Shown: piece after piece, positions 812-63,960 of the stretch
Position numbering within the stretch: the first letter of the stretch is position 1
Layout of the letters: each line of letters starts with the position of its first letter
Assembly: GCA_965637545.1 (NCBI GenBank)
Contig: OZ281497.1
Location: 22,568,001 to 22,632,000 of the forward strand
Reading direction: 5' to 3'
Source of the DNA: Phallusia mammillata
Taxonomy: Eukaryota
Length of the DNA stretch: 64,000 bases
Notes under the pieces: model-generated
Told to the model about the DNA's origin: nothing
Database searches by the model: none
Seen by the model: only the letters and a program-made list of their open reading frames with translations
Made by a program: the position numbers and the translations under genes

Positions 812-1471
812 ATGTCTTCATCTTGTTCTTCAACGTGTTCTTCAACTAGTGAAGACGAAAGTATCTTTAAGTTTTTTGTTACCTTAAAGAAACGAAAGCC
901 GGAGCTTAGAAACGGAAATGTCATCTACTATTCGTTGGACGACAGCTTTGTGGATGGATTCTTGTGGAAAATAAATGCAGAAAAAAAAACCCAAACTGAC
1001 GACCGCGATGTAACCGGTACAGCAGAGAAAATTGACACCAAAGGAAACTCTGTATTCGCAAACCAAAAGGAGGCAGAACGAGCAATTTTTCGAGTTTTTA
1101 CCAAATGCGAAATTAAACGTGTGGGGGAAGTTGTTAAAGAGGAGGACGTCGATGAATACGAAGAAGGTGACGTCGCCTTCACTTTGCGAAATGAGCGAAA
1201 CGATTACCCAATATCAAAAACGTGGAGCCTTAAAAAATTCGGAACTGACATAGAATTTAACACAGGAATTCTTAAAACCTACGAATCTGTGCAATGTGTT
1301 CTGGGTCTTGTAGAATCACCGGTTCCTATTCCATTGCTAGAGATGGTTAATATGTTGGGTGAGCATTTTGGTCGTGAAAACGTTAGGTATGTGTCTGTGT
1401 GCAAAAGTCCTATTGGGTGGTGCAAAATTGCTGGCATACCACGAGACGAAGATAGTGACTGTGAATATTAG
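812..1471 (+). CDS. Family X protein, subfamily A (219 aa, intronless, acidic C-terminal tail)
   Basis: Full ATG-TAG ORF sharing motifs IYYS, W[KR][IV], VTGTAEK, VAFTLRN, CVLGLVES, LGEHFGRENVRYV and WCKIAGI with the other intact paralogs. Closest to 41652..42308. Confidence 0.85.
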   Translation: MSSSCSSTCSSTSEDESIFKFFVTLKKRKPELRNGNVIYYSLDDSFVDGFLWKINAEKKTQTDDRDVTGTAEKIDTKGNSVFANQKEAERAIFRVFTKCEIKRVGEVVKEEDVDEYEEGDVAFTLRNERNDYPISKTWSLKKFGTDIEFNTGILKTYESVQCVLGLVESPVPIPLLEMVNMLGEHFGRENVRYVSVCKSPIGWCKIAGIPRDEDSDCEY

Positions 1472-3401: not shown

Positions 3402-3761
3402 CAGAGTTGCAAGTCGGGCCGGGCTTTTCGGGCCGCAAAAACTCAAAACGGGCCTGCCTTTACGTTCCGTTTCCACCATTTTAGTAACAATTCTCTGGCT
3501 TTGACCTAATGCCCACCCTTCTCTAAAACGTATTGTTTACCCCATTGTCTACTATTGTTTGTTGTGTTTGTTGTCTTTTCTCTCTTTTTTTTCTCATACT
3601 TTGTTGCAACTTGCAAGGCTTTCGTGGATAGGCCTGTCAATCAAAATTTCGGGCCTAAACTGGCTGTGCAAAAACGTTTCGGGTTCGGGCCGGGTTTCGG
3701 GCTTATACTTTCGGGTTCGGGCCGGGTTCGGGCTCAGATTTCGGGCCCGCTTGCGACTCTG
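3402..3761. mobile_element. hAT-type MITE (360 bp)
   Basis: Imperfect TIRs cagagttgcaagtcgggccg / cgggcccgcttgcgactctg. Perfect 8-bp TSD tgctggga at 3394-3401 and 3762-3769. Internal ttcggg repeats. Confidence 0.85.
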
Positions 3762-4390
3762 TGCTGGGATGATTCAAGCAAGTGGACAAATGCCTCATCA
3801 TCCGTTAATATTTAAGAACGACTGCTTGGTTTCTTCCTTATTTCTGCGAACAAGGATGTCTAAAGCGCTTTACGGTTACTGTTGTCTGTGCGATTTTTTA
3901 AGCACGGATCTAAAACGCACGTAATATGGCCCAGTTTGGTTTCGAGAATAGCATTTATTGAAAGTGTCCGGAATTTGGTCCACTTAGATATGGCAACCGA
4001 GACCTAAATGTCAAATATAAAAGAATATTTTAGGTAAGGAGACGTTATCTCAACATTAAAGTAGCAAAATAGTTTGCTAGTGATTCTAGTTCACATGGCG
4101 CGCACTATAACAATCTGCTAAACATTTTACGAATAAAGAATAAAATAAAAAATTTAATTAGTTTAAAGATGAATCAACCTTTCCTGGCAAACGTAAGCGA
4201 GGTTGTTAAACATGTTCAGTTAACTAATATCACAGCAAGACACATTAAATTCCAAAAGTTATATGTATTGCAGGAAAAAACTTCCTTAAAAGTCCACTAC
4301 CACGAGGCACATGAAATTCTAGTTTACAGTTAACAAACGACTTAATATGGAAATGAAGCGAAATAGTCACAAGGTGGTACGAAATGATAA

Positions 4391-4440
4391 GCTGCATACA
4401 TTGCACAGTGTTTCGACTTGTAAGGTCTAATCAGTGCAGC
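4391..4440 (-). ncRNA. Type I hammerhead ribozyme motif, inverted copy (core-mutated)
   Basis: Minus strand reads gctgca-CTGATTA-GACCT tac AAGTC-GAAA-CA ctgtgcaa TGTA-tgcagc. Stem I is intact, but G8 of CUGANGA is T and stem II has a mismatch, so it is probably inactive. Confidence 0.65.
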
Positions 4441-4491
4441 TGGTGACGGGAGATCGGCCGCATTGGCTAGTGTAGCCTTTCAACGGCACTC

Positions 4492-4539
4492 GCACTGATG
4501 AGACCTTGTAGGTCGAAACAATGTGCACTGTCTGCAGCT
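4492..4539 (+). ncRNA. Minimal type I hammerhead ribozyme, copy 1
   Basis: CTGATGA (4495-4501), stem II GACCT/AGGTC, GAAA (4515-4518), stem III ACA/TGT around an 8-nt loop containing palindrome GTGCAC, GTC triplet 4530-4532. Stem I is only 3 bp (gca/tgc). Confidence 0.75.
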
Positions 4540-4768
4540 TATCATTTATTGGCTCTATGCTTTTACATTGGTACTGTGACTTTGAGCCGACTTCACGGTG
4601 GTTCCCAAGCAGTTGCTTGGCCACTGTGAGCCAGTTTCATTTGTGCTGTACGCCCAGTTGTGGCATCGCACAGGCTAGGTGATGCATGGGGTTGTACCCT
4701 GTTGCTCACCACAAACTGGAGTGCCGCTGGATGGCTACACTAGCCAATACGGCGCATCTCTCGTCACC

Positions 4769-4813
4769 AGCTGCACTGATGAGACCTTATAGGTCGAAAC
4801 ACTGTCTGCAGTT
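4769..4813 (+). ncRNA. Minimal type I hammerhead ribozyme, copy 2
   Basis: Stem I agctgca/tgcagtt (7 bp including one G-U), CTGATGA (4776-4782), stem II GACCT tat AGGTC, GAAA (4796-4799), very short stem III, GTC triplet 4804-4806. Confidence 0.8.
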
Positions 4814-5047
4814 AATCATTTATTGGCTCTATGCTTTTACATTTGCACAAAATAATTATTACTTAACAGAGTGGGTCGATTTAGATTGCAGTTTACAGAT
4901 AAAGGGTTGACGCAGCCGTAGCACATTTTAGTAAATACTCTGTTAAAATCGTAAACAAGATTTTTTTACACTACTGACTACACTACTGATTGTACGCGCA
5001 TCTAAATCAGACAAAATTTTAAAAGAGTATTTTTGGATGAATTATGG

Positions 5048-5822
5048 CTACTTGACGATGAATGACTTGATGGTTGTTATGATGCAGGGGTACTGTGATG
5101 CCATTTCATCTTTTGGAAAACTGCTCGAAAGTTGTAAGTCGCAGAGCTTGCTGTCACAACACCGCGCTTGACACGCACTGTTCAAAAAGTGTTTATAGGT
5201 ATAATTGTTTTATTGCTTCGCTAGAGCAAAACACCACTTTAAAAATATAATTATTATAGAAAATATTATGTTGAAAAGTTTAATGAAAAAAATAGATCTG
5301 TTAGTTGTGGAAAGTTTCACTTGCTGCACAAATTTTCATGACGAGTTGAGAGCATAAATGAAGATAATAAAATAGCATTTTGTTGTCTATTTTGGTAATG
5401 TACGATTTGTATACCTATATTTCGTGAAATCCAAGTACACTCCAGAGCTTTCAAAATTGTTTTCCATTGTTCCCACATGGTCACATAAGTCACTTGGATC
5501 GTTGCATATTTCTTTTGGAACACAAGTTATAACCGCCTGATGCTTAGCAGTAGCGGATTCTGTAAGAAAAAGCATATACGGTTAACGTTAGACGCAAAAA
5601 TGCAACAGATAGTTGAATTTCTGTACTACAGTTTACTACCAATATGAAAACAATTTTTTGGAAATTTTCTGCTTTCTGCTCACCACATATGCCATAACGA
5701 AAAGTGTATTCCAGCCTCGCGCACGTCTGATCTTCTCTACCGCAATCACACTCAACAAGTTCAGCACTACCTTGCGAGAAGACCACAAAAATTACGAACA
5801 GCAATAACTTGAATTTCTGCAT
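5048..5822 (-). CDS. Secreted Cys-rich protein, three-finger (LU / activin-receptor ectodomain)-like, 137 aa, copy 1
   Basis: Exons 5822-5684, 5559-5415, 5177-5048 with GT-AG sites and matching phases (1, 2), no internal stop. Signal-peptide-like MQKFKLLLFVIFVVFSQGSAE, 12 Cys, ends of domain CQARCCDSKLCD. Exon lengths and stop conserved in copy 2. Confidence 0.8.
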
Positions 5823-6873
5823 CCTTAATTATGTACGTAAACCCAATGACAATGTAGAGTTTTTGATAAGGAACAGTTCTCTTTGGTTGTTGCTGAAGTA
5901 GTACAGTGGACAACCCGAATGATGTAACAAAGGACATGTTAACCCAGGTAGATCACGAGTGGTTCCTCTTTGGTGCGACTCGGGTTTCGGTATGCGATGA
6001 CGCTCGCTGAATATTTGGATAAGGTTACAGCGTTTTATGTAAATACTTGCACAAACATTTACTCTACACCTGAGTTACAGCCTTAATTTTCTCTTTTGTC
6101 CGTAGCGTTTCGGACTTTTGAAAAGCAAGAGAAAAGTTTAGGAAATGATATTGTTGGGCCACCGGCAAATAACATTGCTGCTTTAAAGTGCAAAACTTTG
6201 ATTGACATAGCAGTGCACTGATCGTGGGGTAAACTAATGCGATCGTGTGGTAAACTAACCTGCAATCGCGGAGACTGAAGACGTGCATTATGCAAGCGGA
6301 CTACCACTGGATTCCGGTTGCAAGTCATAATTTTGTCGAATATTTACTTTTAACAAACAAGGGCAAAGTCATTTAATAGTGCGTAACATCTACCTTTGAA
6401 ACGCTGGAACATCACGCGTAGCGTAACATTTGCCCAGAACAAATTCTTGCACCGATAGCAAACAATTGATTGATTTTAAATTTTGATTTTAAATGCAACA
6501 ACGTTCGTGGCAAAACTGCAGTGAACTATAATCGTGGGGTAACGAAATGGTCACTTGACGCTGCAAATGTACTTGTTCAGGACTTGCAGCATATTTCAGT
6601 AGATGGTATTAAACTAAGCAGCTTTAGGTGGATGTAATCTTTGTCAAAATTTTACTAACAAACCTTTGTTAGTAGATATGAGATTAAGTTTGATTTAGTG
6701 CACATTAAATTTGCTAAGACAAACAAATGTTGATTGTCAAGTAAACGAAAGCCTTACATTTTGTGTATAATATACTAAACGCAGCTTTCAAATTGAACTT
6801 AAGTAACCAATTTTGCAATTTATGTACAACATTACATTTACGGCCACACAATTTTTGAGAAAATTTAATCATA

Positions 6874-7624
6874 ATGGCACAGTTACCAACAAAAGATTCT
6901 GTAAATTCTGTAAAAGAAATTTTCGGTGATTCTATGGCGCCCCAAGGCAGCATATGAATCAGGAAACATGATTTATTATTCTATGGGTGGAGTTTGGTGG
7001 AGAATCGTGGTAAACCTACGGACGACTGCAACGTAAAAGGAACGGCCGAAAAATGGATGAAAATGGAAGCACAGAAGAAGACGCAAAATCCTTCAACAAG
7101 TCTTTACAGGTTGCACCGTTAACAAAATCAAACAAGTTTCCCAAAACGTTACGAGTGATTTACTGGTGCGTGGGGTTGCCTTTACGCTTCGAAATGATTC
7201 ACAACCTGCTGTTTTAGCGAGTTTGAGTGGTGTAACCATTCCAAACCTAGATGAAAGTGGTATATGTGTACAAACGGGTATATTGGAAAACGAAATATCG
7301 GTAAAATGTGTGTATGAAGGGTTTTTTAGGTTTGGTTTGGGTGACCGCTAAGTAGCTTTAAGAGACCGCAAGTGTTTCATTTAAATACCAAAAAATAGCC
7401 ATATTTGCTTAAACGAAATTTTGGGAAACCGCTGAAGAAATTTGTGGACCGTTTCGGTCCCCCAAAACACTTTAAAAAAACAGTGTATGTATGGTTTTGC
7501 TGAGTCATGTGAAGCTGTTCCGTTGTTAACTGTCGTAAACATGCTGAGTGATTATTTTGGCCTTAGGTGGGTGTCAAAATGTACGAACAAAGGTGCTTGG
7601 TGCAACTATGTCGGCATACAGTAA
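6874..7624 (+). pseudogene. Family X pseudogene (subfamily C), frameshifts plus insertion
   Basis: Motifs GNMIYYS, VAFTLRND and WCNYVGIQ* are recognisable across several frames. Interrupted by a ~172-bp insertion. Confidence 0.85.
7317..7488. mobile_element. Short insertion in family X pseudogene
   Basis: Absent from the paralog at 21355-21385 (aaaatgtgtgtatggttttgc). Flanked by duplicated gtatg. No clear TIRs. Confidence 0.5.
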
Positions 7625-12482: not shown

Positions 12483-12746
12483 CTCTAACGTACAAAGTAT
12501 GCAATTTTGCGTAGTTTTCAGTTAAGTGAGCTTAGTACAGTGTCTACTGTTTGGTGTTTAGCAGTAAAGCGTTTTCACGAAAATTGTTTACTTTGTAAAG
12601 GGCATTTGCCTTAATTGCGTTTCAAGTTAATTTAAATATTAACATACATTTAACTAACATGCGTTTCAAAAGTCACATTTTGATTATATATTGTAGATAG
12701 TTTTGTGTTTCAAAATTTGTTACTATTTAAGCCACCATTCTTTGCT

Positions 12747-13397
12747 ATGTCTAACCAACCACCACTACTACCGCCACAACCACAAATACAAAAATACCAG
12801 TTTTCAGTGACTCTTGGCCTTTCCAGGCCGGATTTAATATTTGGAAACATGATATATTATTCCCCCGATGGAGCATATTGGTGGAGGATTCAAGTTGACC
12901 CAACGGCCGATCGCAACATCACCGGCATCGCGGAAAAAATCGATGTCAATGGTACCGCCTTGCTGGCCGACCCGCAGGAGATAACCCGTTCCCTTTCTTG
13001 TGTCTTTACACGTTCGAATGTTAAAAGTGTAACACCAGTTAAATTGCCTCCCACAATCTACCAAAAGGTGTACAATGTTGCATTCACACTCAGGAAAGGC
13101 ACACAATTTCCTGATCCACCGAACTGGACTGGTGTAAATGTAACTATTTCTGGTGTAAACATAAAAACAGGCCCATTAAAGAAGAAAGATTCTGTCCAAT
13201 CTGTGTATGGTTATGCATCCACACCTAATCGTATACAATTACTAAATGTGGTGAACATACTATGTAATTATTTTAGCCCCACAAACGTAAGATATGTGTC
13301 CGAATGTAAGAATCCACTAGGTTGGGGTTTCTTTGCTGATGTAGAGATAGAATTACCAAGATATGCACACATGGACGAATCTTTACTCTGGTGTTAA
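12747..13397 (+). CDS. Family X protein, divergent subfamily (216 aa from first ATG)
   Basis: First ATG at 12747 within ORF 12705..13397. Motifs YQFSVTL, GNMIYYS, NITGIAEKIDVNG, VAFTLRK, SVYGYAS, NVRYVSEC. Confidence 0.85.
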   Translation: MSNQPPLLPPQPQIQKYQFSVTLGLSRPDLIFGNMIYYSPDGAYWWRIQVDPTADRNITGIAEKIDVNGTALLADPQEITRSLSCVFTRSNVKSVTPVKLPPTIYQKVYNVAFTLRKGTQFPDPPNWTGVNVTISGVNIKTGPLKKKDSVQSVYGYASTPNRIQLLNVVNILCNYFSPTNVRYVSECKNPLGWGFFADVEIELPRYAHMDESLLWC

Positions 13398-16905: not shown

Positions 16906-17535
16906 ATGCCTTATGAAACAGCAAAGAATCCAAGCGTGGATCCAGTGGAAAAATACCAGTTTTCCGTGTCGCTCCACTCTGCACGCCGCAGGAATGATTT
17001 GGCATCTGGAAACACTATTTATTATTCTCTTGACGGTGGTTTTGCAAAAGGATTTTTATGGAAAGTTTCGGTAAATCCTGCTCAAAGCCGAAACATCACT
17101 GGAATAGCAGAAAAAATCGATGTAAATGGTCTTACAGTGCAGACTGACCAACAACAAGCTAAGTGGGCTCTTAAACGTATTTTTACCTATTGCAATGTTG
17201 ATAGTATCACACCAGTCACTTGTGCCCCTACAAATGATCTTATGGTCCGTAATGTCGCTTTCACACTTCGAAATGACCCGCAGTTAGTTGATCTGAAAAA
17301 TTTGGCCGGTGTAAACAATATAATACATGTTGATGGTCACAACGTAAATGTAAAAACTGGTCAACTGGCACAAGAAGAATCTGTTCAATGTGTGTATGGC
17401 TTTGCTCAATCAATGGAACCTATTTCGTTGCTAGCTGTGGTAAATATGCTGGGTAATCATTTTGATCATGCAAACGTAAGATATGTGTCCAAATGCATTA
17501 GTTCTGGTGGTTGGTGCAACTATGCTGGTATCTAG
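16906..17535 (+). CDS. Family X protein, subfamily C (209 aa)
   Basis: Full ATG-TAG ORF with all family motifs. The only intact copy ending in WCNYAGI, i.e. keeping the Tyr. Confidence 0.85.
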   Translation: MPYETAKNPSVDPVEKYQFSVSLHSARRRNDLASGNTIYYSLDGGFAKGFLWKVSVNPAQSRNITGIAEKIDVNGLTVQTDQQQAKWALKRIFTYCNVDSITPVTCAPTNDLMVRNVAFTLRNDPQLVDLKNLAGVNNIIHVDGHNVNVKTGQLAQEESVQCVYGFAQSMEPISLLAVVNMLGNHFDHANVRYVSKCISSGGWCNYAGI

Positions 17536-18458
17536 TAAATTACAAATACTAAGTTTGTCTCAAACGTGTCATTTAGAACATGTACGAATGTGTATAACTT
17601 CATAACTACGTTGATTTTGGTTTGAGGAATTTCGGTTTTTCATATGTTAGTTGGCTATTTTTAGACTAAATTTGAACAATCATCAAACCTTTAAAGACGC
17701 TGTATATAAGTTATTATGTATTATTTAAAACGTTGATGTTTAACTTCTGATTTAACGCTTGTTAATTTTTGTCTGATTTAATTACTTTGTATGTATACTG
17801 TACAAATAAATTTGCTAAACAATTTAAGTTTTTTACCGACTGTAAATTTGCCGACAGCATAATTTCACATTGCGTGAAACATTTTAGCATTTACACAGTG
17901 AACCCGAAACATAGAAAATAATTAACATCAAGTTCTTCAGAGACAGTTGGTCGTCGGGATACCAATTAACGTCACTATGCAAACAGTACTGGGCAGCCAT
18001 ACAACACGACTGACACGTAGGTGACGATGGTAACACCAGGTAAATCCCCAGCAGGTTCTTTTATAACGAAACCCCGGTTTCGCTGTGATGACGTATGTTG
18101 ATTTTTCATGACAGGTTGAGGCGCGCCATACACTATGTGTGGAATATACCGTCCACAATATTTTTTTTCCACTCATATTTTATTTGTCACGCTTTGACAC
18201 TAAAACAATTACATAAACAAAATAATGACGAAAGTAATAACTGCGCGACCGAAAAGCACCCAATTCCGACAATAGTAATATATAAGTCTATAGACTTGCT
18301 GAATTTGAAATTCGGATTCATTTTTATCAGTCTTCATTGGTTTTATTGACATGTGATTTATAAGTACGTCGTTATGAACAACGGCCCAATCTGGTATGAC
18401 AAATAACAGTACAATAAGAGTTAAACACGTGAAACGGCGCACATTTGATGAATTATGC

Positions 18459-19239
18459 CTACTTGACGACGAATTTATCGATGCTTGTTAATATGTAGGC
18501 ATACTCTGATGCCAATTCATCTTTTGGAAAATAGCTCGAAAGTTGTAGGTCGCAGAGCTTGCTGTCACAATACCGTGCATGACACGAACTGTTAAAAAAA
18601 GTGTTTTGTGGCTAAACTTGGTTTATTGCTTCGGTAGAGCAAAACACCATTTATTAAAAATATTATTATTTCCGAAAATAATCTGTTAAAAAGTTTATTG
18701 AAAAAATAGATATGTTTGGTTGTGGTAAGTTTCACTTGCTGCACATATTTTCGCAACGAGTTGAGCATAAATGAAGATAATAAAGTAGCATTTTGTTGCA
18801 TATTTTGGTAATGTCCGATTTGTATACCTATATTTCGTGAAATCCAAGTACACTCCAAAGCTTTCAAAATTGTTTTCTATCGTTCCCATATAGTCACATA
18901 GGTCACTTGGATCGTTGCAAATTTCTTTTGGGACACAAGTTATAACCGGCTGATGCTTAGCAGTTGCGGATTCTGCACGAAAAACCTTACTCGGTTAACG
19001 TTAGACACAAATATGCAACAGATAGTTGAATTGCTGTACTACGGTTTACTATAGGATACCAATAGGAATTTTTTTTGGAAATTTTCTGCTTCTTGCTCAC
19101 CACATATGCCATAACGAAAAGTGTATTCCAGCCTCGCGCACGTCTGATCTTCTCTACCGCAATCACACTCAACAAGTTCAGCACTACCTTGCGAGAAGAC
19201 CACAAAAATCACGAACAGCAACAACTTGGATTTCTGCAT
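18459..19239 (-). CDS. Secreted Cys-rich three-finger-like protein, 137 aa, copy 2
   Basis: Exons 19239-19101, 18972-18828, 18588-18459. Same exon lengths, phases and stop as copy 1. The CC motif reads YC here (CHARYCDSKLCD). Confidence 0.8.
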
Positions 19240-20433
19240 CCTTAATTATGTACGTAAACCCAATGACAATGTAGAGTTTTTAATCAAGAAAACTAGCTTC
19301 TGAAGTAATACAGTGGAGAACTTGAATGATGTAATATAGGACATGTCCACCCAAGGCATGTCCTGAGTCGTTCCTCTTTGGTGCGACTCGGCTTTCGATA
19401 CGCGCGATGACGCTCGCTGAATATTTGAATAAGGTTACAGCGTTCTATAGAAATACTTGCAAAAACATTTACTCTTCACCTGAATTACAGCCATAGATTT
19501 CTCTTTTGTCCGCAGCGTTTCGGACTTTTAAAAAGCAGGAGAAAAGTTTGTAAAATGATATTGTTGGGCCACCGGAAAACAACAATGCTGATTTTAATCG
19601 CTAAATCTGTTATTGGCAAAGCTGCGTATACTGAGCTGCGATCGTAGGGTAAACAAAGCTGCGATCGTGGTGGCAGAAGACGTGGATTATAGCGGACTAC
19701 CACCAAATTAAGTCTGGCTTAAATGTATCACCCAATAAGCTAAACGGTTGCTAGTCATACTTTTGTCGAATATTTACATTAAACAAGGACAAAGTCCGTT
19801 AACAGTGTATCACACGTTAAGCAAGTTTCCACAGCATAGCATTTGCGCAGTACAAATTCTTGCACGGTTTAGCAAACAACACTGTTGATTTTAAAGGCAA
19901 CAACGTTGGTGGAAAAACACTGCAGCAAACTTTTTCGCGGGATAACGAAAAAGGCCAATCTTGCTGTACATTTCGATAGCTTGCATTAAACCAACCAGCG
20001 TTGGGTGGATGTAATGTAAATACAAACACTAAGAACAACCAGACACAACGCTTGCCATAACTGATTGCGAGATAGGTGTTTTCGTTTCACAATTTGCATT
20101 GTGCTCAAAGATTGATGTTGCCGAGTTGCACGCACAAAAATGGAGTCAAAGACTTTAGATGGCATCGTTTGCATTATAGACATCATGATTGTAATTCGCA
20201 CACGAAAAGTTATCTTGTTCAAATCTTTGTCAAAATTTTACTAACAAACCTTTGTTAGCAGATATGAGATTAAGTTGTGTGATTTAGTGTACAGAAGATT
20301 TGCTAAGATAAACAAAGTTGACTGCCAAGTTAAAGGTGAAAACCTTACAATATATTTATAATATACTACATGTGGCACCCAAATTAAACTTATGTAAGAC
20401 ATTACATTTGCAGCTACACACTTACTTATCATA

Positions 20434-24117: not shown

Positions 24118-24771
24118 ATGGCTACATATTCTTCACGGCACAACACTGCAAGCATTCCTGATATGCAACAAATTTTCCGGTTTTCTGCAATACTGCCAGC
24201 CAAACGAGACCATCATGCAAATGGGCTTTTAATTTATTATTCTCTTAAAAAAAGTTTTGCTGATGGTTACATGTGGCGAGTAAATCTTAATGAAACATAT
24301 AGAGTCAACGTAAGTGGAACAGTGGAAAAATACAAAATTTTAAACGGGCAAGGAGAACCGGTAGAGTTTGATAAAGATGAAGGAAAGGAAGCTATTTCTA
24401 AAACATTTACAAAATGTACAAATGTAGAAATAATATCAGCAGTCAATGCTTCACCTGGGAAAGTAAATTTTAAACAGTTTGCTATAACCTTTCGGTTTCC
24501 CGAAAATTCACTACCACCAACTATTGAAGAAAGGTTTACAATCAACGGCTCCGGTGTGTGGATTAGAACAGGTCCAGTGAACAGCGATAGAGGATGTGTT
24601 TATGGTTTTGCTGAATCTGAAAATGATGTTGGTTTGCTGAAGATGGCGGAAAGCCTAGGAAACTGTTATGGTCGAGAAAATTTGGTGTATGTTGCCAATT
24701 GTTTGATGAAAGAACAATGGCTTAAATTTGCAGAAATAGAAATCCCCCAAACACATTTCCAACAACAATAA
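24118..24771 (+). CDS. Family X protein, subfamily B (217 aa)
   Basis: Full ORF with FRFSA, LIYYSLKKSFADGYMWRV, VSGTVEK, FAITFR, CVYGFAES, GRENLVYVANC. Confidence 0.85.
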   Translation: MATYSSRHNTASIPDMQQIFRFSAILPAKRDHHANGLLIYYSLKKSFADGYMWRVNLNETYRVNVSGTVEKYKILNGQGEPVEFDKDEGKEAISKTFTKCTNVEIISAVNASPGKVNFKQFAITFRFPENSLPPTIEERFTINGSGVWIRTGPVNSDRGCVYGFAESENDVGLLKMAESLGNCYGRENLVYVANCLMKEQWLKFAEIEIPQTHFQQQ

Positions 24772-26688: not shown

Positions 26689-27285
26689 ATGGCGTCAGCA
26701 ACCGAAGATTCTGTTCATTTTTTGGTGCAAAAATTCAAGTTTTCGGTGACTCTTGAGAACCCCAAGGCAGCATATTTTTGAGGAAATGTGATTTATTATT
26801 CTATGGATGGAATTTGGTGGAGAGTTGTGGTGGAACCTACCTATGAACGCAACGTTAAGGGAACGGCAGAAAAACTGGATAAAAATGGTAGCACCAAAGA
26901 GGAAGCAGAATGGATCCTTCAACGTGTCTTTACACGGAGCACTGTTGACAAAATCGAACAAGTTTCCCAAAGAGCCACGAGATTCACAACCTGCAGTGAT
27001 TCACAACCTGCTGTTTTAGAGAATTGGATTGACGTAAACCTTCCAAATCTAGGTGATAGTGGTGTAAACATAAAAACGGGTAGTTTGGCAGAAGAACCAT
27101 CTGTCCAATGTGTGTATGGTTTAGCTGAGTCATTGGAATCTGTCCCGTTGTTAACTGTCGTAAACTTACTAAGGAATCATTTTGGTCGTGCGAACCTGAG
27201 GTGTGTGCTAAAATGCACGAACCAAGAAGCTTGGTTCAACTATGCTGGCATACAGTACATTTCAAGTACTGTAAATGCAATGTAG
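26689..27285 (+). pseudogene. Family X near-intact pseudogene (subfamily C)
   Basis: ATG at 26689 is in frame with ORF 26788..27285, with one TGA at 26779-26781. The VAFTLRN motif is replaced by a local duplication of gattcacaacctgc. Confidence 0.8.
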
Positions 27286-31644: not shown

Positions 31645-32301
31645 ATGGCTAAATGTTCTACACAGGACACTACTGCAAGCATTCCTGGAATGAGAAAAAA
31701 ATTCCAGTTTTCAGCAAAACTGCCCGACAAACGAGACTATTATGCAAAGGGGGTTTTGATATATTATTCTCTTAAAAAAAGTTTTGCTGCCGGTTACATG
31801 TGGCGAGTAAATCTTCAAAAAACATATAGCGTCAACGTAAGTGGATCAGTGGAAAAATACAAAATTTCAAACGGGCGAGGAGAACCGGTAGAGTTTTATA
31901 AAGATGAAGCAAAGGAAGCTATTTCTAAAACATTTACGAACTGCACAAAAGTAGAAATAACAACGACATTGAAGGATGTGCCTAAAAAAGTTTATTGGGA
32001 TCAATTTGCCATTACCTTTCATTTTGCTGGCGATACACTACCATCTACTGATGAAAGTACTGATGAAAGCAGGTTTATCATAAACGTCCCTGGAGAATCT
32101 CCGAGAAAAATTCGAACAGGCCCATTAAACAGCGACAGAGGATGTGTTTATGGTTTTGTCGAATTTACAAATGATGTAGCCTTGCTCGACGTTGTGCAGC
32201 AGCTAGGCGACAAACAAGGTCGAGAAAATGTAGTGTACGTGGCCAAGTGTTTAAACAAGATAAAATGGCTACAATTTACAGGAATAGAAACAGGCACTTA
32301 A
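31645..32301 (+). CDS. Family X protein, subfamily B (218 aa)
   Basis: Full ORF, close paralog of 24118..24771. Upstream ~1 kb also duplicated (23150-24100 vs 30170-31620). Confidence 0.85.
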   Translation: MAKCSTQDTTASIPGMRKKFQFSAKLPDKRDYYAKGVLIYYSLKKSFAAGYMWRVNLQKTYSVNVSGSVEKYKISNGRGEPVEFYKDEAKEAISKTFTNCTKVEITTTLKDVPKKVYWDQFAITFHFAGDTLPSTDESTDESRFIINVPGESPRKIRTGPLNSDRGCVYGFVEFTNDVALLDVVQQLGDKQGRENVVYVAKCLNKIKWLQFTGIETGT

Positions 32302-41651: not shown

Positions 41652-42308
41652 ATGGCTTCATCTCAACTCGCGACCAAAACTTCCATTTGTGACTCAGAAG
41701 ATTTCCAATTTTCGATCACCATGAACCGGCCAAGGCCGGAACTCAAAGATGGTAATGTGATCTACTACTCATTTGATAACAGTTTTGCGAATGGATACTT
41801 GTGGAAAATATATGCGGGACCAACTGACGACTGCAATATGTCTGGAACGGCGAAAAAAGTTGCTACAGATGGGTCAGCAGTTTTATCAAGCTTGCGTGAT
41901 GCCGCAAAGGCAATTTCATGCACTTTTACTGACAGCCAGATTAAAACAATAAACAGCGTTTCAACTCCGCAGCCTGCTAATGAAGAAAACAAGGTATTTG
42001 ATGTTGCCTTCACACTTAAAAACTTCGAAGACAAATACCCAGAATTATCTCACTGGAGTTTGGAGAAAGTGGGAACTGATATAGAAGTCAGAACTGGAAC
42101 CCTTAAAACTTACGAATCCATTAAATGTGTACTTGGTCTTGCGGAGTCCCCTTCGCCTTTCCTATTGCTACACATGGTTAATATATTGGGCGAACACTTT
42201 GGCAGAAAAAACGTTAGGTATGTGTCAGAGTGTAACAATCCGATAGGTTGGTGCAAAGTGGCTGGCATACCTTTGCACGATGATGATGATTATGATAACA
42301 GGCATTAA
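41652..42308 (+). CDS. Family X protein, subfamily A (218 aa, acidic tail)
   Basis: Full ORF, closest to 812..1471. Last copy of the array. Confidence 0.85.
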   Translation: MASSQLATKTSICDSEDFQFSITMNRPRPELKDGNVIYYSFDNSFANGYLWKIYAGPTDDCNMSGTAKKVATDGSAVLSSLRDAAKAISCTFTDSQIKTINSVSTPQPANEENKVFDVAFTLKNFEDKYPELSHWSLEKVGTDIEVRTGTLKTYESIKCVLGLAESPSPFLLLHMVNILGEHFGRKNVRYVSECNNPIGWCKVAGIPLHDDDDYDNRH

Positions 42309-44532: not shown

Positions 44533-47500
44533 TTAAGCCGGAATTCCATTCACTTGCTCATCTCCATTCACCTGCTCGTTTCCGTTTTTTAACTGAGCCG
44601 CATTTTCCGACTTTTGTGATTCCACCTTTTCAGCGATTTCCGCGCCTTGTTTCGCGTCAACGCAATTGTCAGTTTCCACCTGTTTGGGATTTATCACCAC
44701 GCAAACGTCGTCCTCCTCGTCGTGGCCATTCACTTGTGCCACTGGCGGCTTGGACATCTGTGCCGGCTTTGCAGGGAGAATGGGCAAGGCTGGGGGCGGC
44801 GGCGGAAATCCCGGAATCGTTCCGTTCATCAGCGGAAACGCGTTCGGATGGTAAATGTAGTGAGCGTTGGCTGGAGCTGGGGGTGGGTTTTGGGGCACAA
44901 AATGCGTTGAAGTGGCTGAGAGCGCGGCTGACTTTGGGGGAGCGCTGATAATCGAGTATGTAAGGATCGGCTGCATTCCCCCTGTGAGAGTAATAGGCGA
45001 TGTGATCACGCTTTGACTGGTGTTGTTCGCTGATGACGCTGAAACGGTGACATCTGTTGGCTGTGGACTGCTGTAGGTTTGAACAACGGTGGCTGGTTGT
45101 GACACCGGGGCTGGACTCGATCCGCTCGTAGCTGTTTCAATTCCTTCTTGCACTGGAGGAGCTGGGATTGCCACCGGTGCTTGGATCATCCCTCCCATGT
45201 TGTATAGAGATTTAATTGGGCGAGCCTTCAAAACGTTTGAATTAAAATACTGCTAAATCTGATAATGTATTTAACCATTCCCAGATAAAAGTATTTACCT
45301 ATTTATATTCAAGCGAATCGGTTTACAATAGGTCAAAATTGTGTTTTTTATCAGGCTATTTAAAATAAACCGTTGACAAAAGCTGTTAAAAAAGGTTGTA
45401 TTTTTTTTCTATTTATTCGAGATTTCGATACCAGGACAAGCCTGAGCAAAATTTCCGATCACTTTGTTTGTGTCAAATGTGGATCAAGCAACATTTTGCC
45501 CAGCAGTTCACTTGTTTGAGTTTACGATTCTTAACGTCAGAGATTCGATTCTCGAGATTCGATTCTCGAGATTCGATATAATATATTGTTAGAAGTTACC
45601 TGGTCACATTCTCCATCTCTGCAGGCCTGGCACAAATCTGAGTTGTGTTGGTTACGTGGACGCCCCGGTCTTCTGTCGATGCGAATTGGCGGCTGAAGAA
45701 AGCCGTAATAAGTCTGGCCAACTTTGTTGTAAACGTTGCACATCACCTTAAGGATTAAAGCAATGCTTAAGTCATTTGCATTTAGGAAGAGATACTGGAA
45801 GTAAACAAGGATTTTTAACTCAAACATTTTAACTGCAATACTTTTAACGCACAAAGAGAGTTAGACGTGGGATGTGCGCTTTAAAATGACTCAAAATGTA
45901 TTTAGAAACAGAAACAAAAACTAAACTTCTAGATAGTTTGTGTGTAGAGAATACATTTTTGTTGGTATTTCATCAAATCAAATCTATACAATACCATACG
46001 TTTAATTGAGATAAAAAAAACTATATAAATTATTGTTATCTACTTCAAATATGTGCTGAACATATACCGCCACTAGAAGGAACTGCACTTCTCATATGAC
46101 AACATTTAAATACGTGGATATTGGTTTCATGTTACGCAGGCAACAGCCATAAATCAGGGTCAGGCAAGGTTTCAATGCATATAACCATAACACGATAGCA
46201 CTTTACATATACAACCGGATGTTCAACCCAATTGTCCCTTGTGCTATTGTTTATGTCAAGAGAAAACCTTTTGTCAATATACTTGCGTGTTTAGCGTTAC
46301 GGCAAAAGGCGTGTTGTATGAAAATGAGCATCGTTGCCGTTAAAAATGCAAATTTGTTTCTTGTTTTTGCATTTAGAGAAGACAAAAGATACCAGTTTAT
46401 AATTGTTTCAATTTTTGTCGCAATATACCCATATTGTTTTATTGTACAAAGTTGAGAAATGTTATGTACAGCACTTGAGAGTATAAATGGTTTAAATAGG
46501 GATCTAAACATTAAACTCGCGCCAATCTCGGGAGACACAAGTCTCCAAGACTACAAGGAATGGCACCATTTAGTTTCTTTACAAAAACTTAAGTTAATAG
46601 TTCAAAAAGTGAAAATGTGTAATTGAAGCTCTGTTGTTTGAGTTAAGACCATTTGTTGCGGCACCTACAGCAACGGTATATCATCAGCAGTACAAAATGT
46701 TACAAAGACTCGCTACAGCGAAATCAAAGTGTTTGGCAAATGGGGAAGGCAGCAGTTTATATTTAGTATTCGATTCCAAAACAATAATTCCCAATAAAAC
46801 GGCACTGAAATTCGGAGAATCCCATAACGGCCCTAAACCCGGCTATTCTAGGCAAATGTGCATCGCCAGAAAGACTCCTAAAACGTGCGCTGCGGGCAAT
46901 TGTGACCGAAACTCCGGATACCGGTCCTGGCTGTTTGAATTCCCACCGACTGAAATGTACTTGGAAAATCGTCCCCACAGCAATTTGCCGGTTTGCGCTG
47001 CGCCAGAGCACAATTTCGGAAACATATTGGCACTGCAGCCTTATTGCTTTTGGGCTCGGACAAACATTTTACTGAGCGTTTACTGGTTTGTGTATTGCAA
47101 CAATATGGCAGCGGCGACATACGCCCGAAAGTCCGTCTTCCTGTTAGGAGTGATAATTTGTCAACCGTTTCTCGCGCTAATCTGCACTGTAAACTGTAAT
47201 TCTCTATTTTGGATGCATGTAATCTGATACTCATGTTATTGCTATTGGAATGAGTACAGTCCTATTTTAAGCTCAGATGCAGAATTACTCCGAAAACTAT
47301 CCGCCCTTTCACTGTTGCAAATAATCATATGTTTTGATTTAAACATGGCAACGGGAAAAAGTAGAAAACAAAGATTTATCAGTCATTCAATATGTTGTCC
47401 AGCACTTAGGAGCGTTTTTAAGCTAAACATAATCTTTTAAATATTTTAATGTAAATGCAATTATTCAGGAGACAAACGCAACTGTGAATAAAACTTTTCA

Positions 47501-61000: not shown

Positions 61001-63960
61001 TTACAAGTATTTAGCAATAAAACGCCTGAATTAGTTTATCATTCCCGGGATACATGGGCAAAATGTTTCGGAGCATTTGTCCTGAACAAGTACACGGCCA
61101 GGTAACGAACTCCTCGCGAACCGGCACTGGGCCGCGGACCGACGGTTGCCCACCACTGATGCTGTAGAGTTTAGATATAACGGTGTCATACAGGCCCTAT
61201 AACCCCAGAAGTCAAGAATACATACATATATCACACTATGTCATGCACACGAACCTTCTTTCTCGGTTTTAGCTGTTCCTTCCAAACCCGGTGTTCTTCA
61301 TTGTAATCATCATCAAGGGTTTTCAGTTTCTCAGATTCTCGTTCAACCAGAAGTCGTCTCTTCTCGTTCTGAAGCTGAGTGAGTTCTTTCAAGTTGGCGT
61401 CACATCTTGCTTCCAATTCCTTCTGCTGACCCTCGTGCTTGAATTGGAGTTTCAGTTTTTCCTGCTTTTGCCGTTTGGTTTCGGTGACAGTAAACTGTAT
61501 TGAAAAATCACACAAGATTTTGGTTTTTGGTTGGTTTGCAAATTGTTTCAAGATTTTTTGTAACGTCTCTTTTGGAATTTTCTCGAACGCCCGCGGCCCA
61601 AATTAAAAATATATTTCAGCAAAAGACTGTAGTTACGTAAGTAAATAATGTTTAATGACAAAAATAAAGGCCCAGATAGACCTAAAAAGCGACGTGACTG
61701 ATGTGGCCCCTCATATTGCCTAACATGGCATGAGCACCTGCCGAAACGTTTGAAAAATAAAGCATGTTGCTTTTTAAGTTTATTTGGCCCGTTATATTCG
61801 TCATTAAACTTATGAACAGATCCGTGTATAGTATTCTAAATGAAAATATTTTGTGTATTGCAAGTATGTCGGTTTCATCAACGTTTCAACGTCCTCCCCA
61901 GGTCGCCTTCATCAGGGTAATAACACTTCGACCGTCAATTAAAACCCGAAAGAAACAAAATGAAAAAGGGTAAAATATCACAAACAACGACATGATAAAA
62001 GAGTTAACAACTCAATGGTAATTTATTCCCCACATTACCAAGCAAGATTAAAGCATATTAGAAAATGTAAAACTAATTGTTATGTAGTTCACCTTACTTT
62101 AGAACTTGTACTTCAAAAACCATAGTATGAACAACATACTTCTATAGTCGCTAAGAAACACGAATACATAGGGTGTATTTGTCTGTCAGTGCAAAATCAA
62201 TCGATGTGTTTTACAAATGCCGCAGACAGCATCAAAAGGTCTGCGGTTACTTGTGGACACGGAATTCGAGAGGTTACTTGGGGTCACGAAGGTACAAGAG
62301 GTCATTGAGGTTTTAGCCGGATTAATGAATGAAAGCGGTTTACGTGAAATTGCACTTATGACAACACGTTTGTCCAATGTGCATTTGTTATTGATTATTT
62401 AAAACTTCGATATGAGTGCTTTACTATGCGCAAAATCTTTTTGAATAGGTGTGTTTAGCTTTCAAATACTGTTCAAAAATACAATTTATTTCAATAAATT
62501 GGGGGTTGAACACAAAAAGGGGTGGTGATTTGGTACAGTATGTCCGAAAAACCTATGTCACAATATTTAGTTTATGCAGCACAGATAGTGGGTTACTGGG
62601 TTTGCAACATGTTGTTACACGAACGTTTATGTATGACATATGTGCGTGCCCTTCCACGAATCACAAGCAATACCTGGCACGAACATACATTTATACCAGG
62701 AACGTGTAGGACAAGTAAGGTATGCTATCTGAAAGCGTTCGTTTTATATCTGAATTCTTTAGCACACGGAATTAACAACGAAGAGATTTTGGGTTACATT
62801 TCTAGGCCGTCTATTTATAAGTTTGGCAGTTGTGGCACTTTAAAGCCTGAAAAGAAAGTGTTTAAAAACAATGTTACATGGTACAGGAGAATAAGAAAAT
62901 CCTCTTGTTTTTCACTGGGTCACAAATTTGGTATCTTCCGATGGCCAACTCTGTATATCAAATACTTATGTAGAAACCAATGTTTCCTAAACCTAAACTG
63001 TTCGAAATGTCATAAATAGTTTTTGCAGATGAAATCGTTTACCAAAACTGCGGGTTTCGTGTTAAAAGTAGTCAGAAATACTAAAACACATGTCCCACAT
63101 GCCTGTATTAATGGTTTACACAAAAGATTTTGCCTTGTTGTTGTATTTGCTTCAACTAACCAATTTTTTCCCCCACAACTAAGTGCACATCCCCGTGAGA
63201 GAGCGCTGACACCCACTTTGAAAACCAGGTGAACGTAACAACTTTTCCACACACAAAAAAAACAAGTCAGGTTTTTCACCTGTTTAATTTTGTCGCGTTC
63301 ACTGAGCTGTTCTCCCTGATGAACTTGAATTCTCAGACTTTTCTTGAACATCGACATGCGAGCTTTACCCTCTGTACGTTGGATCTTAGGAAGCCTCAGT
63401 TTCTCCTGACGTTGGCGATCAAGAAGTTCTTCTTCAATCCTTTTGTTGTGACGCAACATCTGTTCTTGCTCCTGAATCGAATAAAGGGCACTGGTTCAAT
63501 ACAACTCAAATGAACAGGTTTTAGCATCAATTTTGCTCCATTTGGGACAAAAAAATGACATTTAGGGTCAGGGAAATGATTTATTTTTTCTGTGTATATT
63601 TAGTAAAAAAAAACACTTACGGGTTCAATTAGCTATGTTAGCAATCATTGACAATGCCAATTATATTTAAATTCAGAAGAAGGGATTAAAATGCACCAAC
63701 AGGTCATCAGTAAACAACTAATTCAGTATCTAAATGGTATAAATTGTTAAATTAACAATGTTAATGTTGCATTTTTTATTTAGGCTGTTATAAAAAGGTA
63801 AAAACAAATTGAACGAAGCTCTCATTCACAACTACCTTGTCATGACGTAACACGAGTTGATGACGTTGCAAGTGGTATTGATCCTTCACTTGTTGTTTGC
63901 AGGTCTGGTATCTCTCTTGTAAGTGACGTTCCTCCAATGTCCAAATCTCACATTCTCGAG
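58033..63960 (-). CDS. SLK: STE20-like kinase SLK/STK10, 3' exons (C-terminal coiled-coil region; gene continues beyond window)
   Basis: Exons 63960-63836 ([41 protein letters not shown]), 63471-63280 ([23 protein letters not shown]...DKIKQ), 61494-61255 (ETKRQKQE...[19 protein letters not shown]...KPRKK), 59605-59312 (probable cassette) and terminal 58224-58033 ([17 protein letters not shown]...*). These match SLK/STK10 C-terminal sequence as I recall it. Confidence 0.9.
60568..60776. mobile_element. Possible hAT-type MITE
   Basis: Short TIRs cagtgtttc / gaaaacactg. TSD ambiguous. Confidence 0.35.
60818..60915. mobile_element. Small Tc1/pogo-type MITE
   Basis: TA-caagtaaacctcgcttaacc ... 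ggtttaaccgatgtttcctg-TA: imperfect TIRs with TA flanks. Confidence 0.55.
60921..61158. mobile_element. hAT (Buster-type) MITE in SLK intron
   Basis: TIRs cagtggtcggcaacc / ggttgcccaccactg. ctgtagag on both flanks, offset by 3 nt on the right. Confidence 0.75.

What the first reader, a model, noticed from the sequence alone, without database searches (positions are those of the whole stretch)
4382..4842. Three hammerhead ribozyme motifs forming a retrozyme / Penelope-like module
Seen: two plus-strand CTGATGA-GACCT-N3-AGGTC-GAAA-C..GTC cores with predicted cleavage after 4532 and 4806 (274 nt apart), plus an inverted, core-mutated third copy (4391-4440) inside a ~95-bp inverted repeat. Copy 2 has a stem III too short to fold as a monomer; copy 1 has a palindromic GTGCAC loop. 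Established: minimal type I hammerheads in tandem repeats of a few hundred nt occur in animal retrozymes and Penelope-like elements, can cleave as dimers, and can yield small circular RNAs; inverted partial copies are typical of Penelope-like insertions. Inference: a transcript across both cores could release a 274-nt monomer or circRNA. It sits ~200 bp downstream of the stop codon of the secreted gene copy 1, on the opposite strand.
Basis: partly seen in the sequence, partly recalled or inferred. Interest (0 to 1): 0.85.

Follow-up and report, generated by a model that had tools for sequence, protein, structure and literature searches.

The report
Decayed hammerhead retroelement insertion in ascidian
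A 462-bp stretch of sea-squirt (Phallusia mammillata) DNA is one old, partly broken insertion of a small hammerhead-ribozyme-carrying retroelement of the Penelope-like/retrozyme kind, which is real and recognisable but ordinary for an invertebrate genome and unlikely to be working at this site.

Summary
Two plus-strand hammerhead (HHR) cores have predicted cleavage after 4532 and 4806, 274 nt apart. A third, inverted copy has a dead core (G8 to U). A full type I HHR descriptor finds one site in the window, against 0.005 expected by chance.

The locus is one compound insertion. A plus-strand copy of 1.28 units (4492-4843) abuts, head to head at 4491/4492, an inverted 5'-truncated copy (4491 to 4382). 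The plus copy carries 22 nt more at its 3' end.

This is the published insertion signature of Penelope-like elements (PLEs): partial tandem, adjacent inverted truncated copy, and a tail at one end.

- Copy 1 lost the 5' strand of stem I at the junction and keeps only 3 bp.
- Copy 2 is the only complete HHR, with stems of 7, 5 and 2 bp.
- In a transcript of the whole locus, the inverted copy is predicted to lock copy 2 into a duplex of about 110 bp.

Release of a 274-nt circle from this locus is therefore unlikely. There is no second copy and no RT/GIY-YIG ORF in the 64 kb. Rfam's gathering threshold is not reached. The host genome could not be searched.

Verdict: new member of a known kind, of low to moderate interest.

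The parts
4382..4491 (-). Inverted, 5'-truncated copy of the element (110 nt). It corresponds to unit positions 4719 to about 4821 and ends 15 nt past its would-be cleavage site.
   Evidence: Inverted repeat I1/I2; self-BLAST; three-copy alignment A1. The flank beyond 4382 shows no similarity to the unit.
4410..4434 (-). Dead hammerhead core of the inverted copy: CTGATTA (G8 to U at 4429), one broken pair in stem II (AAGTC instead of AGGTC), and GTA instead of GTC at the cleavage triplet.
   Evidence: 1 mismatch. That G8 is essential for catalysis is established knowledge (G8C abolishes cleavage in PMC11167929).
4492..4532 (+). Hammerhead copy 1. Core 4495-4501. Stem II 4502-4506/4510-4514 with loop TGT. 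GAAA 4515-4518. The 13-nt stem III region 4519-4531 contains palindrome GTGCAC (4523-4528). C17 is at 4532. The 5' strand of stem I is cut off by the head-to-head junction, leaving 3 bp (GCA/TGC).
   Evidence: The descriptor passes only when stem I is relaxed to 3 bp. The MFE fold does not form stem I.
4533..4806 (+). The one full 274-nt unit between the two predicted cleavage sites. GC is 51%, against 35-41% in the flanks.
   Evidence: As a circle its MFE is -96.5 kcal/mol, z = -2.9 against 200 dinucleotide shuffles, with 66% of bases paired.
4769..4813 (+). Hammerhead copy 2, the only complete motif. Stem I 4769-4775/4807-4813 (7 bp, one G-U). Core 4776-4782. Stem II 4783-4787/4791-4795 with loop TAT. 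GAAA 4796-4799. Stem III is 2 bp (4799-4805, 4800-4804) with loop ACT. C17 is at 4806.
   Evidence: Rfam Hammerhead_1 22.8 bits; descriptor hit with stem I = 7 and stem II = 5; stems I and II appear in the MFE fold.
4807..4843 (+). 3' terminal segment of the plus-strand copy (37 nt past the cleavage site). The last 22 nt (4822-4843) are absent from the inverted copy's end, so they form a tail at one end only. The same 37 nt occur internally at 4533-4569.
   Evidence: Direct repeat D2; alignment A1. The flank beyond 4843 shows no similarity to the unit.
4491..4492 (.). Head-to-head junction of the 5' ends of the inverted and the direct copy.
   Evidence: Repeat coordinates; alignment A1.
4819..4824 (-). 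AATAAA on the minus strand inside the element, with a second at 4545-4550. These are the only canonical poly(A) signals on that strand between 4300 and 5050, downstream of the stop codon (5048-5050) of the neighbouring minus-strand gene.
   Evidence: Actual use as a poly(A) signal is inference only.

Best explanation
The interval 4382-4843 is one old, decayed insertion of a short, non-coding, hammerhead-bearing retroelement in the genome of the ascidian Phallusia mammillata. The element is an animal non-LTR retrozyme, that is, a non-autonomous derivative of a Penelope-like element.

Proposed origin (inferred):
- A PLE reverse transcriptase/GIY-YIG endonuclease supplied in trans cut both strands of an AT-rich target.
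- It primed reverse transcription on both strands from sites shortly downstream of the hammerhead in a longer-than-unit (multimeric or circular) RNA.
- One cDNA ran 352 nt (1.28 units) and the other 110 nt.
- Their 5' ends were joined at 4491/4492.

This gives the observed arrangement: partial tandem, adjacent inverted 5'-truncated copy, and a 22-nt tail at one end.

In the source family, the hammerhead would process multimeric transcripts into unit-length RNAs. It is a minimal type I motif with no loop-loop contacts and a short or palindromic stem III, so it would probably act as a dimer or with protein help. Those unit-length RNAs can then be circularised.

At this locus that function is largely lost. 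One core is mutated at G8. One copy lacks its stem I. The remaining complete copy is predicted to be buried in a hairpin with the inverted copy.

Shown: the sequence anatomy, the motif statistics and the predicted folds. Inferred: the mechanism of insertion, the ribozyme activity, the existence of a source family and the current inactivity.
For: - The motif is real and far above chance and is weakly recognised by Rfam Hammerhead_1.
- Repeat anatomy: direct copy 4492-4843 and inverted copy 4491-4382 meet head to head, with different 3' ends 37 and 15 nt after the cleavage site, both ending in CATT(T).
- This matches the published PLE insertion signature: high 5' truncation, partial tandems, an inverted 5'-truncated copy immediately adjacent, and a 30-40 bp tail often at one end only (PMC8557442).
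- It also matches the in vitro finding that a PLE protein cleaves and extends both DNA strands at ATT-containing AT-rich sites, from two nearby internal RT start sites that define the tail (PMC11167929).
- Pairs of minimal HHRs 100-700 bp apart on opposite strands were already attributed to truncated PLEs (PMC4209133).
- The 274-nt spacing cannot hold an RT ORF. It lies in the 170-400 nt range of animal retrozymes (PMC7229834), which a recent preprint derives from PLE pLTRs (10.64898/2026.07.22.740005).
- The unit is more GC-rich than its flanks and folds better than shuffles as a circle.
- Decay: copies differ by about 5-11%; G8U in the inverted copy; stem I of copy 1 reduced to 3 bp.
- The whole-locus fold is a long hairpin at -247.7 kcal/mol, z = -14.3, pairing 4382-4491 with the copy 2 region.
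Against: - No second copy of the unit exists in the 64-kb window, and the host genome could not be searched. That the element belongs to a repeated family is therefore inferred, not shown.
- No RT or GIY-YIG domain occurs in any of the 26 ORFs scanned (all 21 ORFs of at least 110 aa, plus five shorter pieces).
- No target-site duplication could be recognised, and no paralogous empty site exists to fix the boundaries.
- Some features typical of metazoan PLE min-HHRs are absent: there is no extra nucleotide between A9 and G10.1, and helix II is 5 bp rather than 6-8 (PMC4209133).
- The tail is 22 nt rather than 30-40.
- Rfam's gathering score is not met.
- Thermodynamic folds say nothing certain about co-transcriptional ribozyme folding, so residual cleavage at 4806 cannot be excluded.
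Confidence: 0.72

Rival explanations
1. The locus is a working retrozyme. A transcript across 4480-4830 self-cleaves after 4532 and 4806, possibly through a double-hammerhead formed by the two copies. The 274-nt product is then circularised by a tRNA ligase.
For: - Both plus-strand cores are intact.
- The spacing and the self-paired monomer resemble known retrozyme RNAs (PMC7229834).
- Copy 1 has a palindromic stem III region that could extend helix III in a dimer.
- Minimal HHRs can be protein-assisted (PMC11167929).
Against: - Copy 1 retains only 3 bp of stem I because the copy starts at 4492.
- There are only 1.28 units, so the locus fails the criterion of two consecutive units with complete HHRs (10.64898/2026.07.22.740005).
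- The upstream inverted copy is predicted to pair with both hammerheads over 56-110 nt.
- Cofolding of the natural segments did not produce the double-hammerhead as the best structure.
- There is no evidence of a promoter or of transcripts.
Confidence: 0.1
2. The element is a DNA-level foldback or MITE-like transposon with terminal inverted repeats of about 105 bp (4382-4491 and 4719-4821). Alternatively it is a local rearrangement of satellite DNA, and the hammerhead motif is just passenger sequence.
For: Long inverted arms lie near both ends of the 462-bp interval, and the whole folds as a hairpin.
Against: - The ends are asymmetric: 22 extra nt lie on the right.
- Those 22 nt recur internally in direct orientation together with a second hammerhead. 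A partial tandem explains this without further events; terminal inverted repeats do not.
- No target-site duplication was recognised at either candidate pair of ends (reading).
- A complete three-helix hammerhead is expected 0.005 times per window by chance. It is the hallmark of PLE pLTRs and retrozymes (PMC4209133).
Confidence: 0.05
3. Whatever its origin, the insertion now serves the neighbouring minus-strand secreted-protein gene. Its antisense strand would provide the poly(A) signal and 3' UTR end. Alternatively the hairpin would be a source of small RNAs.
For: - The only AATAAA on the minus strand downstream of the stop codon at 5048 lie inside the element, at 4824-4819 and 4550-4545.
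- Retrozymes that overlap exons tend to sit in 3' UTRs (10.64898/2026.07.22.740005).
- There is strong hairpin potential.
Against: - There are no expression data.
- The paralogous gene copy (18444-19950) has unrelated sequence beyond its stop and no such element, so the element is not needed by the gene family.
- AATAAA in an AT-rich hexamer context is a weak signal on its own.
Confidence: 0.1
4. The hammerhead resemblance is a chance match in a local repeat.
For: Rfam's gathering threshold is not reached.
Against: - Three matches against 0.21 expected for the bare core pattern.
- 0.005 expected per window for the full descriptor.
- All core positions, the G10.1-C11.1 pair, A15.1-U16.1 and a cleavable GUC are present in two copies.
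Confidence: 0.01

Closest known systems
Animal non-LTR retrozymes (Cervera & de la Pena 2020, PMC7229834; Li et al. 2026 preprint, 10.64898/2026.07.22.740005)
   Same: Type I hammerhead in a non-coding repeat unit of a few hundred nt (274 here; 170-400 published). No LTR, PBS or PPT. The monomer is self-paired. It lies in intergenic or 3'-of-gene sequence. The weak helix III suggests dimeric action, as in amphibian retrozymes.
   Different: Only 1.28 units are present instead of a tandem array, and only one hammerhead is complete. Unit GC is 51% (published: below 50%). No loop 1/loop 2 tertiary contact motifs are present. Copy number and RNA products are unknown. I found no description of retrozymes in tunicates in the searchable library.
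Penelope-like elements and their pLTR min-hammerheads (Cervera & de la Pena 2014, PMC4209133; Craig et al. 2021, PMC8557442; Frangieh et al. 2024, PMC11167929)
   Same: The insertion architecture matches: 5' truncation, partial tandem, adjacent inverted 5'-truncated copy, and an extra tail at one 3' end. The 3' ends lie shortly downstream of the hammerhead. The flanks are AT-rich and the junctions end in ATT. The minimal type I HHR has a G10.1-C11.1 pair and a palindromic helix III region.
   Different: There is no RT/GIY-YIG ORF in the element or in the ORFs scanned in the window. The unit is 274 nt rather than about 3 kb. Helix II is 5 bp without the extra nucleotide after A9. The tail is 22 nt rather than 30-40.
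Newt satellite 2 and Schistosoma Sm-alpha hammerhead repeats
   Same: Type I hammerhead in a short repeat. Helix III is too weak for monomeric cleavage, and a double-hammerhead mechanism was proposed (as summarised in PMC7229834 and PMC4209133).
   Different: Those are high-copy arrays with canonical loop-loop contacts and demonstrated transcripts and cleavage. Here there is a single decayed locus and no contacts are recognisable.
Marine phage/metagenome type I hammerheads sharing the same core and stem II (loci L001-L129)
   Same: Identical CUGAUGA-GACCU-N3-AGGUC-GAAAC. Some share most of the 5' strand of stem I (for example CAGTTGCA).
   Different: They have stable 4-6 bp helix III hairpins and sit just upstream of ATG codons on phage-like contigs. 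There is no similarity outside the ribozyme. They are not relatives of the element.

Membership tests
Hammerhead ribozyme, type I (Rfam RF00163) | Conserved catalytic core: C3 U4 G5 A6 N7 G8 A9, G12 A13 A14, the A15.1-U16.1 pair, and H17 at the cleavage site | tested here: met
   Met in copies 1 and 2. Not met in the inverted copy (G8 to U).
Hammerhead ribozyme, type I (Rfam RF00163) | Three helices around the core, with helix I open and helices II and III closed by loops | tested here: met
   Copy 2 has helices of 7, 5 and 2 bp. Copy 1 has helix I reduced to 3 bp by truncation.
Hammerhead ribozyme, type I (Rfam RF00163) | Score at or above the family's gathering threshold (34 bits) | tested here: not met
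   22.8 bits for 4770-4812. Copy 1 was matched only by the Hammerhead_3 model, at 17.4 bits. The short helix III lowers the score.
Hammerhead ribozyme, type I (Rfam RF00163) | Self-cleavage at the predicted site | not testable with these tools
   Needs in vitro transcription and cleavage assays.
Animal non-LTR retrozyme | Type I HHR inside head-to-tail repeats of about 170-400 bp | tested here: inconclusive
   The spacing is 274 nt, but only 1.28 units are present. TRF reports no array.
Animal non-LTR retrozyme | [quoted passage not shown] | tested here: not met
   Only copy 2 is complete.
Animal non-LTR retrozyme | Multiple dispersed or tandem copies in the genome | not testable with these tools
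   There are none in the window. The P. mammillata genome is not in a DNA collection that could be searched. Metagenome and viral scans found only unrelated hammerheads.
Animal non-LTR retrozyme | Unit-length linear and circular RNAs in vivo | not testable with these tools
   No expression data were available.
Animal non-LTR retrozyme | Highly self-paired monomer RNA | tested here: met
   Circular MFE -96.5 kcal/mol, z = -2.9, 66% of bases paired. The effect is moderate.
Penelope-like element (autonomous) | Single ORF with a telomerase-like RT and a GIY-YIG endonuclease | tested here: not met
   The element is 462 bp, and no stop-free stretch in it exceeds 57 codons. No RT or GIY-YIG Pfam hit occurs in any of the 26 window ORFs scanned. 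It can therefore only be a non-autonomous relative.
Penelope-like element (insertion signature) | 5' truncation, partial tandem (pLTR-like), adjacent inverted 5'-truncated copy, and a tail at one end | tested here: met
   compared with the description in PMC8557442. The tail is 22 nt, against 30-40 published.
Penelope-like element (min-HHR of metazoan pLTRs) | Extra nucleotide between A9 and G10.1, and helix II of 6-8 bp | tested here: not met
   G10.1 follows A9 directly and helix II is 5 bp (compared with PMC4209133).
Penelope-like element (min-HHR of metazoan pLTRs) | G10.1-C11.1 pair, and a palindromic 15.2-16.2/loop 3 | tested here: met
   G-C closes helix II in all copies. GTGCAC is in copy 1, and ACACUGU in copy 2 is a near-palindrome.

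The most novel reading that the evidence does not exclude
Phallusia mammillata, and perhaps other ascidians, the sister group of vertebrates, harbours a still-active family of hammerhead retrozymes of about 274-281 nt, mobilised by a resident PLE and expressed as small circular RNAs. This locus would be one fossil of that family. A secondary possibility is that the fossil was co-opted as the poly(A) signal of the adjacent secreted-protein gene.
Probability: 0.25. Interest if true: 0.4.

Novelty: new member of a known kind. Interest (0 to 1): 0.25.

Why it matters
Hammerhead-bearing retroelements (PLE pLTRs and retrozymes) are already known in thousands of copies across many animal phyla, so one more locus changes little.

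Its modest value is threefold. It places such an element in an ascidian, a group for which I found only a bare count of Rfam type I hammerheads in Didemnum (PMC8704543). It is a compact textbook example of the PLE double-strand-primed insertion signature, built from a 274-nt non-coding unit. That fits the recent proposal that animal retrozymes are non-autonomous PLE derivatives. It also shows that Rfam's gathering cut-off misses this class, so such elements go unannotated.

If the family proved active, tunicates would offer a tractable chordate model for ribozyme-made circular RNAs.

Tried and rejected
1. Rfam at gathering thresholds over the window found nothing.
2. A first core pattern had the wrong spacer length and gave 0 hits. 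It was corrected.
3. Scans of metagenome and viral contigs for the core plus stem II returned 129 loci. BLAST showed that similarity is confined to the ribozyme. Inspection showed mostly phage-type hammerheads with long helix III.
4. One eukaryote-like contig (L030) has a min-HHR with the same stem I 5' strand, but its organism could not be identified.
5. I looked for an empty paralogous site to define the insertion boundaries. The duplicated segment starts 190 nt to the right of the element, so none exists.
6. I tested whether the copies extend beyond 4382 and 4843. They do not; alignment scores fall within the shuffle range.
7. I considered using translated ORFs of the unit to find other copies in protein databases. 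I dropped this because the longest stop-free stretch is 57 codons and the host genome's ORFs appear absent from the database.
8. Cofolding of natural hammerhead segments did not give a double-hammerhead as the best structure, which is uninformative either way.
9. No tRNA-like or tandem-repeat features occur in or near the element.

Full report
**The observation**

The pattern CTGATGAG-N11-CGAAAC occurs at 4495-4519 and 4776-4800 on the plus strand without mismatch, and at 4434-4410 on the minus strand with one mismatch. For up to two mismatches, 0.21 matches per window are expected by chance, and no shuffle reached three. The GTC triplets end at 4532 and 4806, 274 nt apart. GTGCAC lies at 4523-4528.

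A stricter descriptor of my own required the core, helix I of at least 4 bp, helix II of at least 4 bp, A15.1-U16.1 and H17. It finds exactly one site in the 64 kb, at 4776, with helix I of 7 bp and helix II of 5 bp. Only 1 of 200 dinucleotide shuffles had any site.

Rfam finds nothing at gathering thresholds. In E-value mode, Hammerhead_1 scores 22.8 bits against a gathering score of 34 on 4770-4812. The very short helix III costs score. The motif is real but would not be annotated by a standard pipeline.

**Anatomy**

Repeat analysis and a three-way alignment show that the 462-bp interval consists of two pieces meeting head to head at 4491/4492.

- The plus-strand piece (4492-4843, 352 nt) begins with GCA-CTGATGA. 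It runs through one full unit to the second hammerhead and ends 37 nt after the second cleavage site. That makes 1.28 units.
- The minus-strand piece (4491 down to 4382, 110 nt) matches unit positions 4719 to about 4821 at 89% identity. It ends 15 nt after its would-be cleavage site.

Both 3' ends finish in CATT(T). The flanks beyond 4382 and 4843 show no similarity to the unit.

This has three consequences.

- Copy 1 has lost the 5' strand of helix I. Only GCA/UGC (3 bp) remains, and the sequence upstream of it is the antisense of the inverted piece.
- Copy 2 is the only complete hammerhead. Its helices are 7, 5 and 2 bp, with loop 2 = UAU and loop 3 = ACU. The other two copies carry two tandem CAnTGTn heptamers after GAAA, and copy 2 carries one. 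Its short helix III therefore reflects a 7-nt indel whose direction cannot be decided from three copies.
- The inverted copy is dead. It has G8 to U at 4429, one broken pair in helix II, and GUA at the cleavage triplet.

None of the copies shows an internal loop in helix I or a loop 2 able to make the canonical tertiary contact. These are minimal hammerheads.

**Folding**

Copy 2 alone forms helices I and II in its minimum-energy fold. Copy 1 and the inverted copy do not form helix I.

The 274-nt unit folded as a circle gives -96.5 kcal/mol, z = -2.9, with 66% of bases paired. This is moderately more structured than shuffles, as reported for retrozyme RNAs.

A transcript of the whole locus folds into one long hairpin at -247.7 kcal/mol, z = -14.3. 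In it, 4382-4491 pairs with the region of copy 2. The inverted copy can also pair with copy 1 over 56 nt. Cofolding of the natural hammerhead segments did not give a double-hammerhead as the best structure, but such models do not capture hammerhead tertiary folding.

**Context**

Two exons of a STE20-like kinase gene (61234-61551 and 63277-63459, minus strand) are 81/81 and 60/60 identical to the UniRef Phallusia mammillata protein. Identity to Ciona intestinalis is 65-68%. The window is therefore ascidian DNA.

There is no other copy of the unit in the window. No tRNA or tandem array lies nearby. No reverse transcriptase or GIY-YIG domain occurs in any of the 26 ORFs scanned, which cover all 21 ORFs of at least 110 aa plus five shorter pieces.

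The element lies about 205 bp beyond the stop codon (5048-5050) of a minus-strand gene with a signal-peptide-like first exon. That gene's paralogue at 18444-19950 shares no sequence beyond 15 nt past the stop, so no empty site is available for comparison.

**Relatives elsewhere**

The host genome is not in any DNA collection I could scan. Scans of metagenome and viral contigs with the core plus helix II gave 129 loci. Similarity never extends beyond the ribozyme. Most are phage-type type I hammerheads with stable helix III, lying just upstream of start codons.

One eukaryote-like contig (L030) carries a minimal hammerhead with the same ten bases 5' of the core and the same helix II, followed by a (GATA)n microsatellite. 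Its organism could not be identified. Several phage hammerheads share most of that helix I sequence, so I do not treat this as proven homology.

**Interpretation**

The arrangement matches point for point the insertion signature described for Penelope-like elements. [quoted passage not shown]

A purified PLE protein cleaves and extends both strands of an AT-rich target. It starts reverse transcription at two nearby internal sites downstream of the hammerhead, and the sequence between those sites is the tail (PMC11167929).

Here the two 3' ends lie 15 and 37 nt downstream of the hammerhead, both at CATT, and they differ by 22 nt. Pairs of minimal hammerheads 100-700 bp apart on opposite strands were already ascribed to truncated PLEs in Schistosoma (PMC4209133).

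Because the two direct hammerheads are only 274 nt apart, the template cannot have been a coding PLE. It was a short non-coding unit. That fits the class called animal non-LTR retrozymes (170-400 nt; PMC7229834), which a 2026 preprint derives from PLE pLTRs (10.64898/2026.07.22.740005).

I therefore read the locus as one compound insertion made from a multimeric or circular RNA of such an element, followed by decay. The copies differ by about 5-11%.

**What this does not support**

Copy 1 lacks helix I. The locus fails the working criterion of two consecutive units with complete hammerheads. The inverted copy is predicted to sequester the complete ribozyme.

Metazoan minimal hammerheads cleave poorly in vitro even in favourable constructs (PMC4209133; PMC11167929). 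Residual cleavage at 4806 cannot be excluded.

**Rivals**

- A foldback or MITE-like DNA element is less parsimonious. The ends are asymmetric, the 22-nt end segment recurs internally in direct orientation with a second hammerhead, and no target duplication is seen.
- Chance is excluded.
- Co-option is possible but untested. The only minus-strand AATAAA signals downstream of the neighbouring gene's stop codon lie inside the element, and the hairpin could yield small RNAs.

**Novelty and score**

This is a new member of a known kind. I found no description of retrozymes or PLE hammerheads in tunicates in the searchable library beyond a count of nine Rfam type I hits in Didemnum vexillum (PMC8704543). 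The class, its ribozyme and its insertion architecture are all well described.

Interest is 0.25. The main open point is whether an active family exists in the Phallusia genome. A genome-wide search would settle that quickly.

Noticed in passing
window 812-1471, 12705-13397, 16906-17535, 24118-24771, 26788-27285, 31645-32301, 41652-42308 (all +); broken copy about 6994-7624 (+): A tandem family of seven single-exon ORFs of 165-230 aa sharing motifs (for example N.IYYS, GTAEK, VAFTLRN, ESVQCVYG, NVRYVS.C). There is also one copy split over three frames. No Pfam domain was found. No homologue of 120-383 aa was found among 5.8 billion proteins, and there was no exact record of the first ORF's (812-1468) product. 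This looks like a lineage-specific orphan gene cluster.
   Followed up: partly
window 61234-61551 (-), 63277-63459 (-): Exons of a STE20-like/STK10 kinase (PKK domain) are 100% identical to the UniRef Phallusia mammillata protein. This identifies the source organism.
   Followed up: yes
window 5033-6547 and 18444-19950: A segmental duplication (81% identity over about 1.5 kb) carries a minus-strand gene whose first exon (5544-5822) encodes a signal-peptide-like N-terminus and cysteine-rich sequence. The similarity stops 15 nt past the stop codon, so the two copies have unrelated 3' flanks.
   Followed up: partly
window 4819-4824 and 4545-4550 (minus strand): The retroelement's antisense strand contributes the only AATAAA hexamers downstream of the stop codon (5048) of the adjacent minus-strand gene within 750 nt. 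This is a possible transposon-supplied poly(A) signal and is untested.
   Followed up: partly
L030 1430-1500 (metagenome contig Ga0126339_10081008): A eukaryote-like contig carries a minimal type I hammerhead with the same helix II and the same ten bases 5' of the core as the window's copy 2. It is followed directly by a (GATA)n microsatellite. This looks like a truncated PLE-type insertion in an unidentified marine animal.
   Followed up: partly
loci L001-L129 (marine metagenome and IMG/VR contigs): More than 100 type I hammerheads share CUGAUGA-GACCU-N3-AGGUC-GAAAC, have stable helix III hairpins, and typically lie 10-40 nt upstream of an ATG on phage-like contigs. Several contigs carry two or three of them.
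   Followed up: no
window 3677-3745: A short G+C-rich tandem repeat (32-nt period built of TTCGGG-like hexamers, 2.2 copies) lies about 640 bp to the left of the element.
   Followed up: no
window 45540-45854 (-): An ORF piece has a borderline match to the zinc-binding domain Zn_ribbon_3CxxC (21.7 bits against a cut-off of 23, E = 3e-4). This is possibly an exon of an unrelated gene.
   Followed up: no
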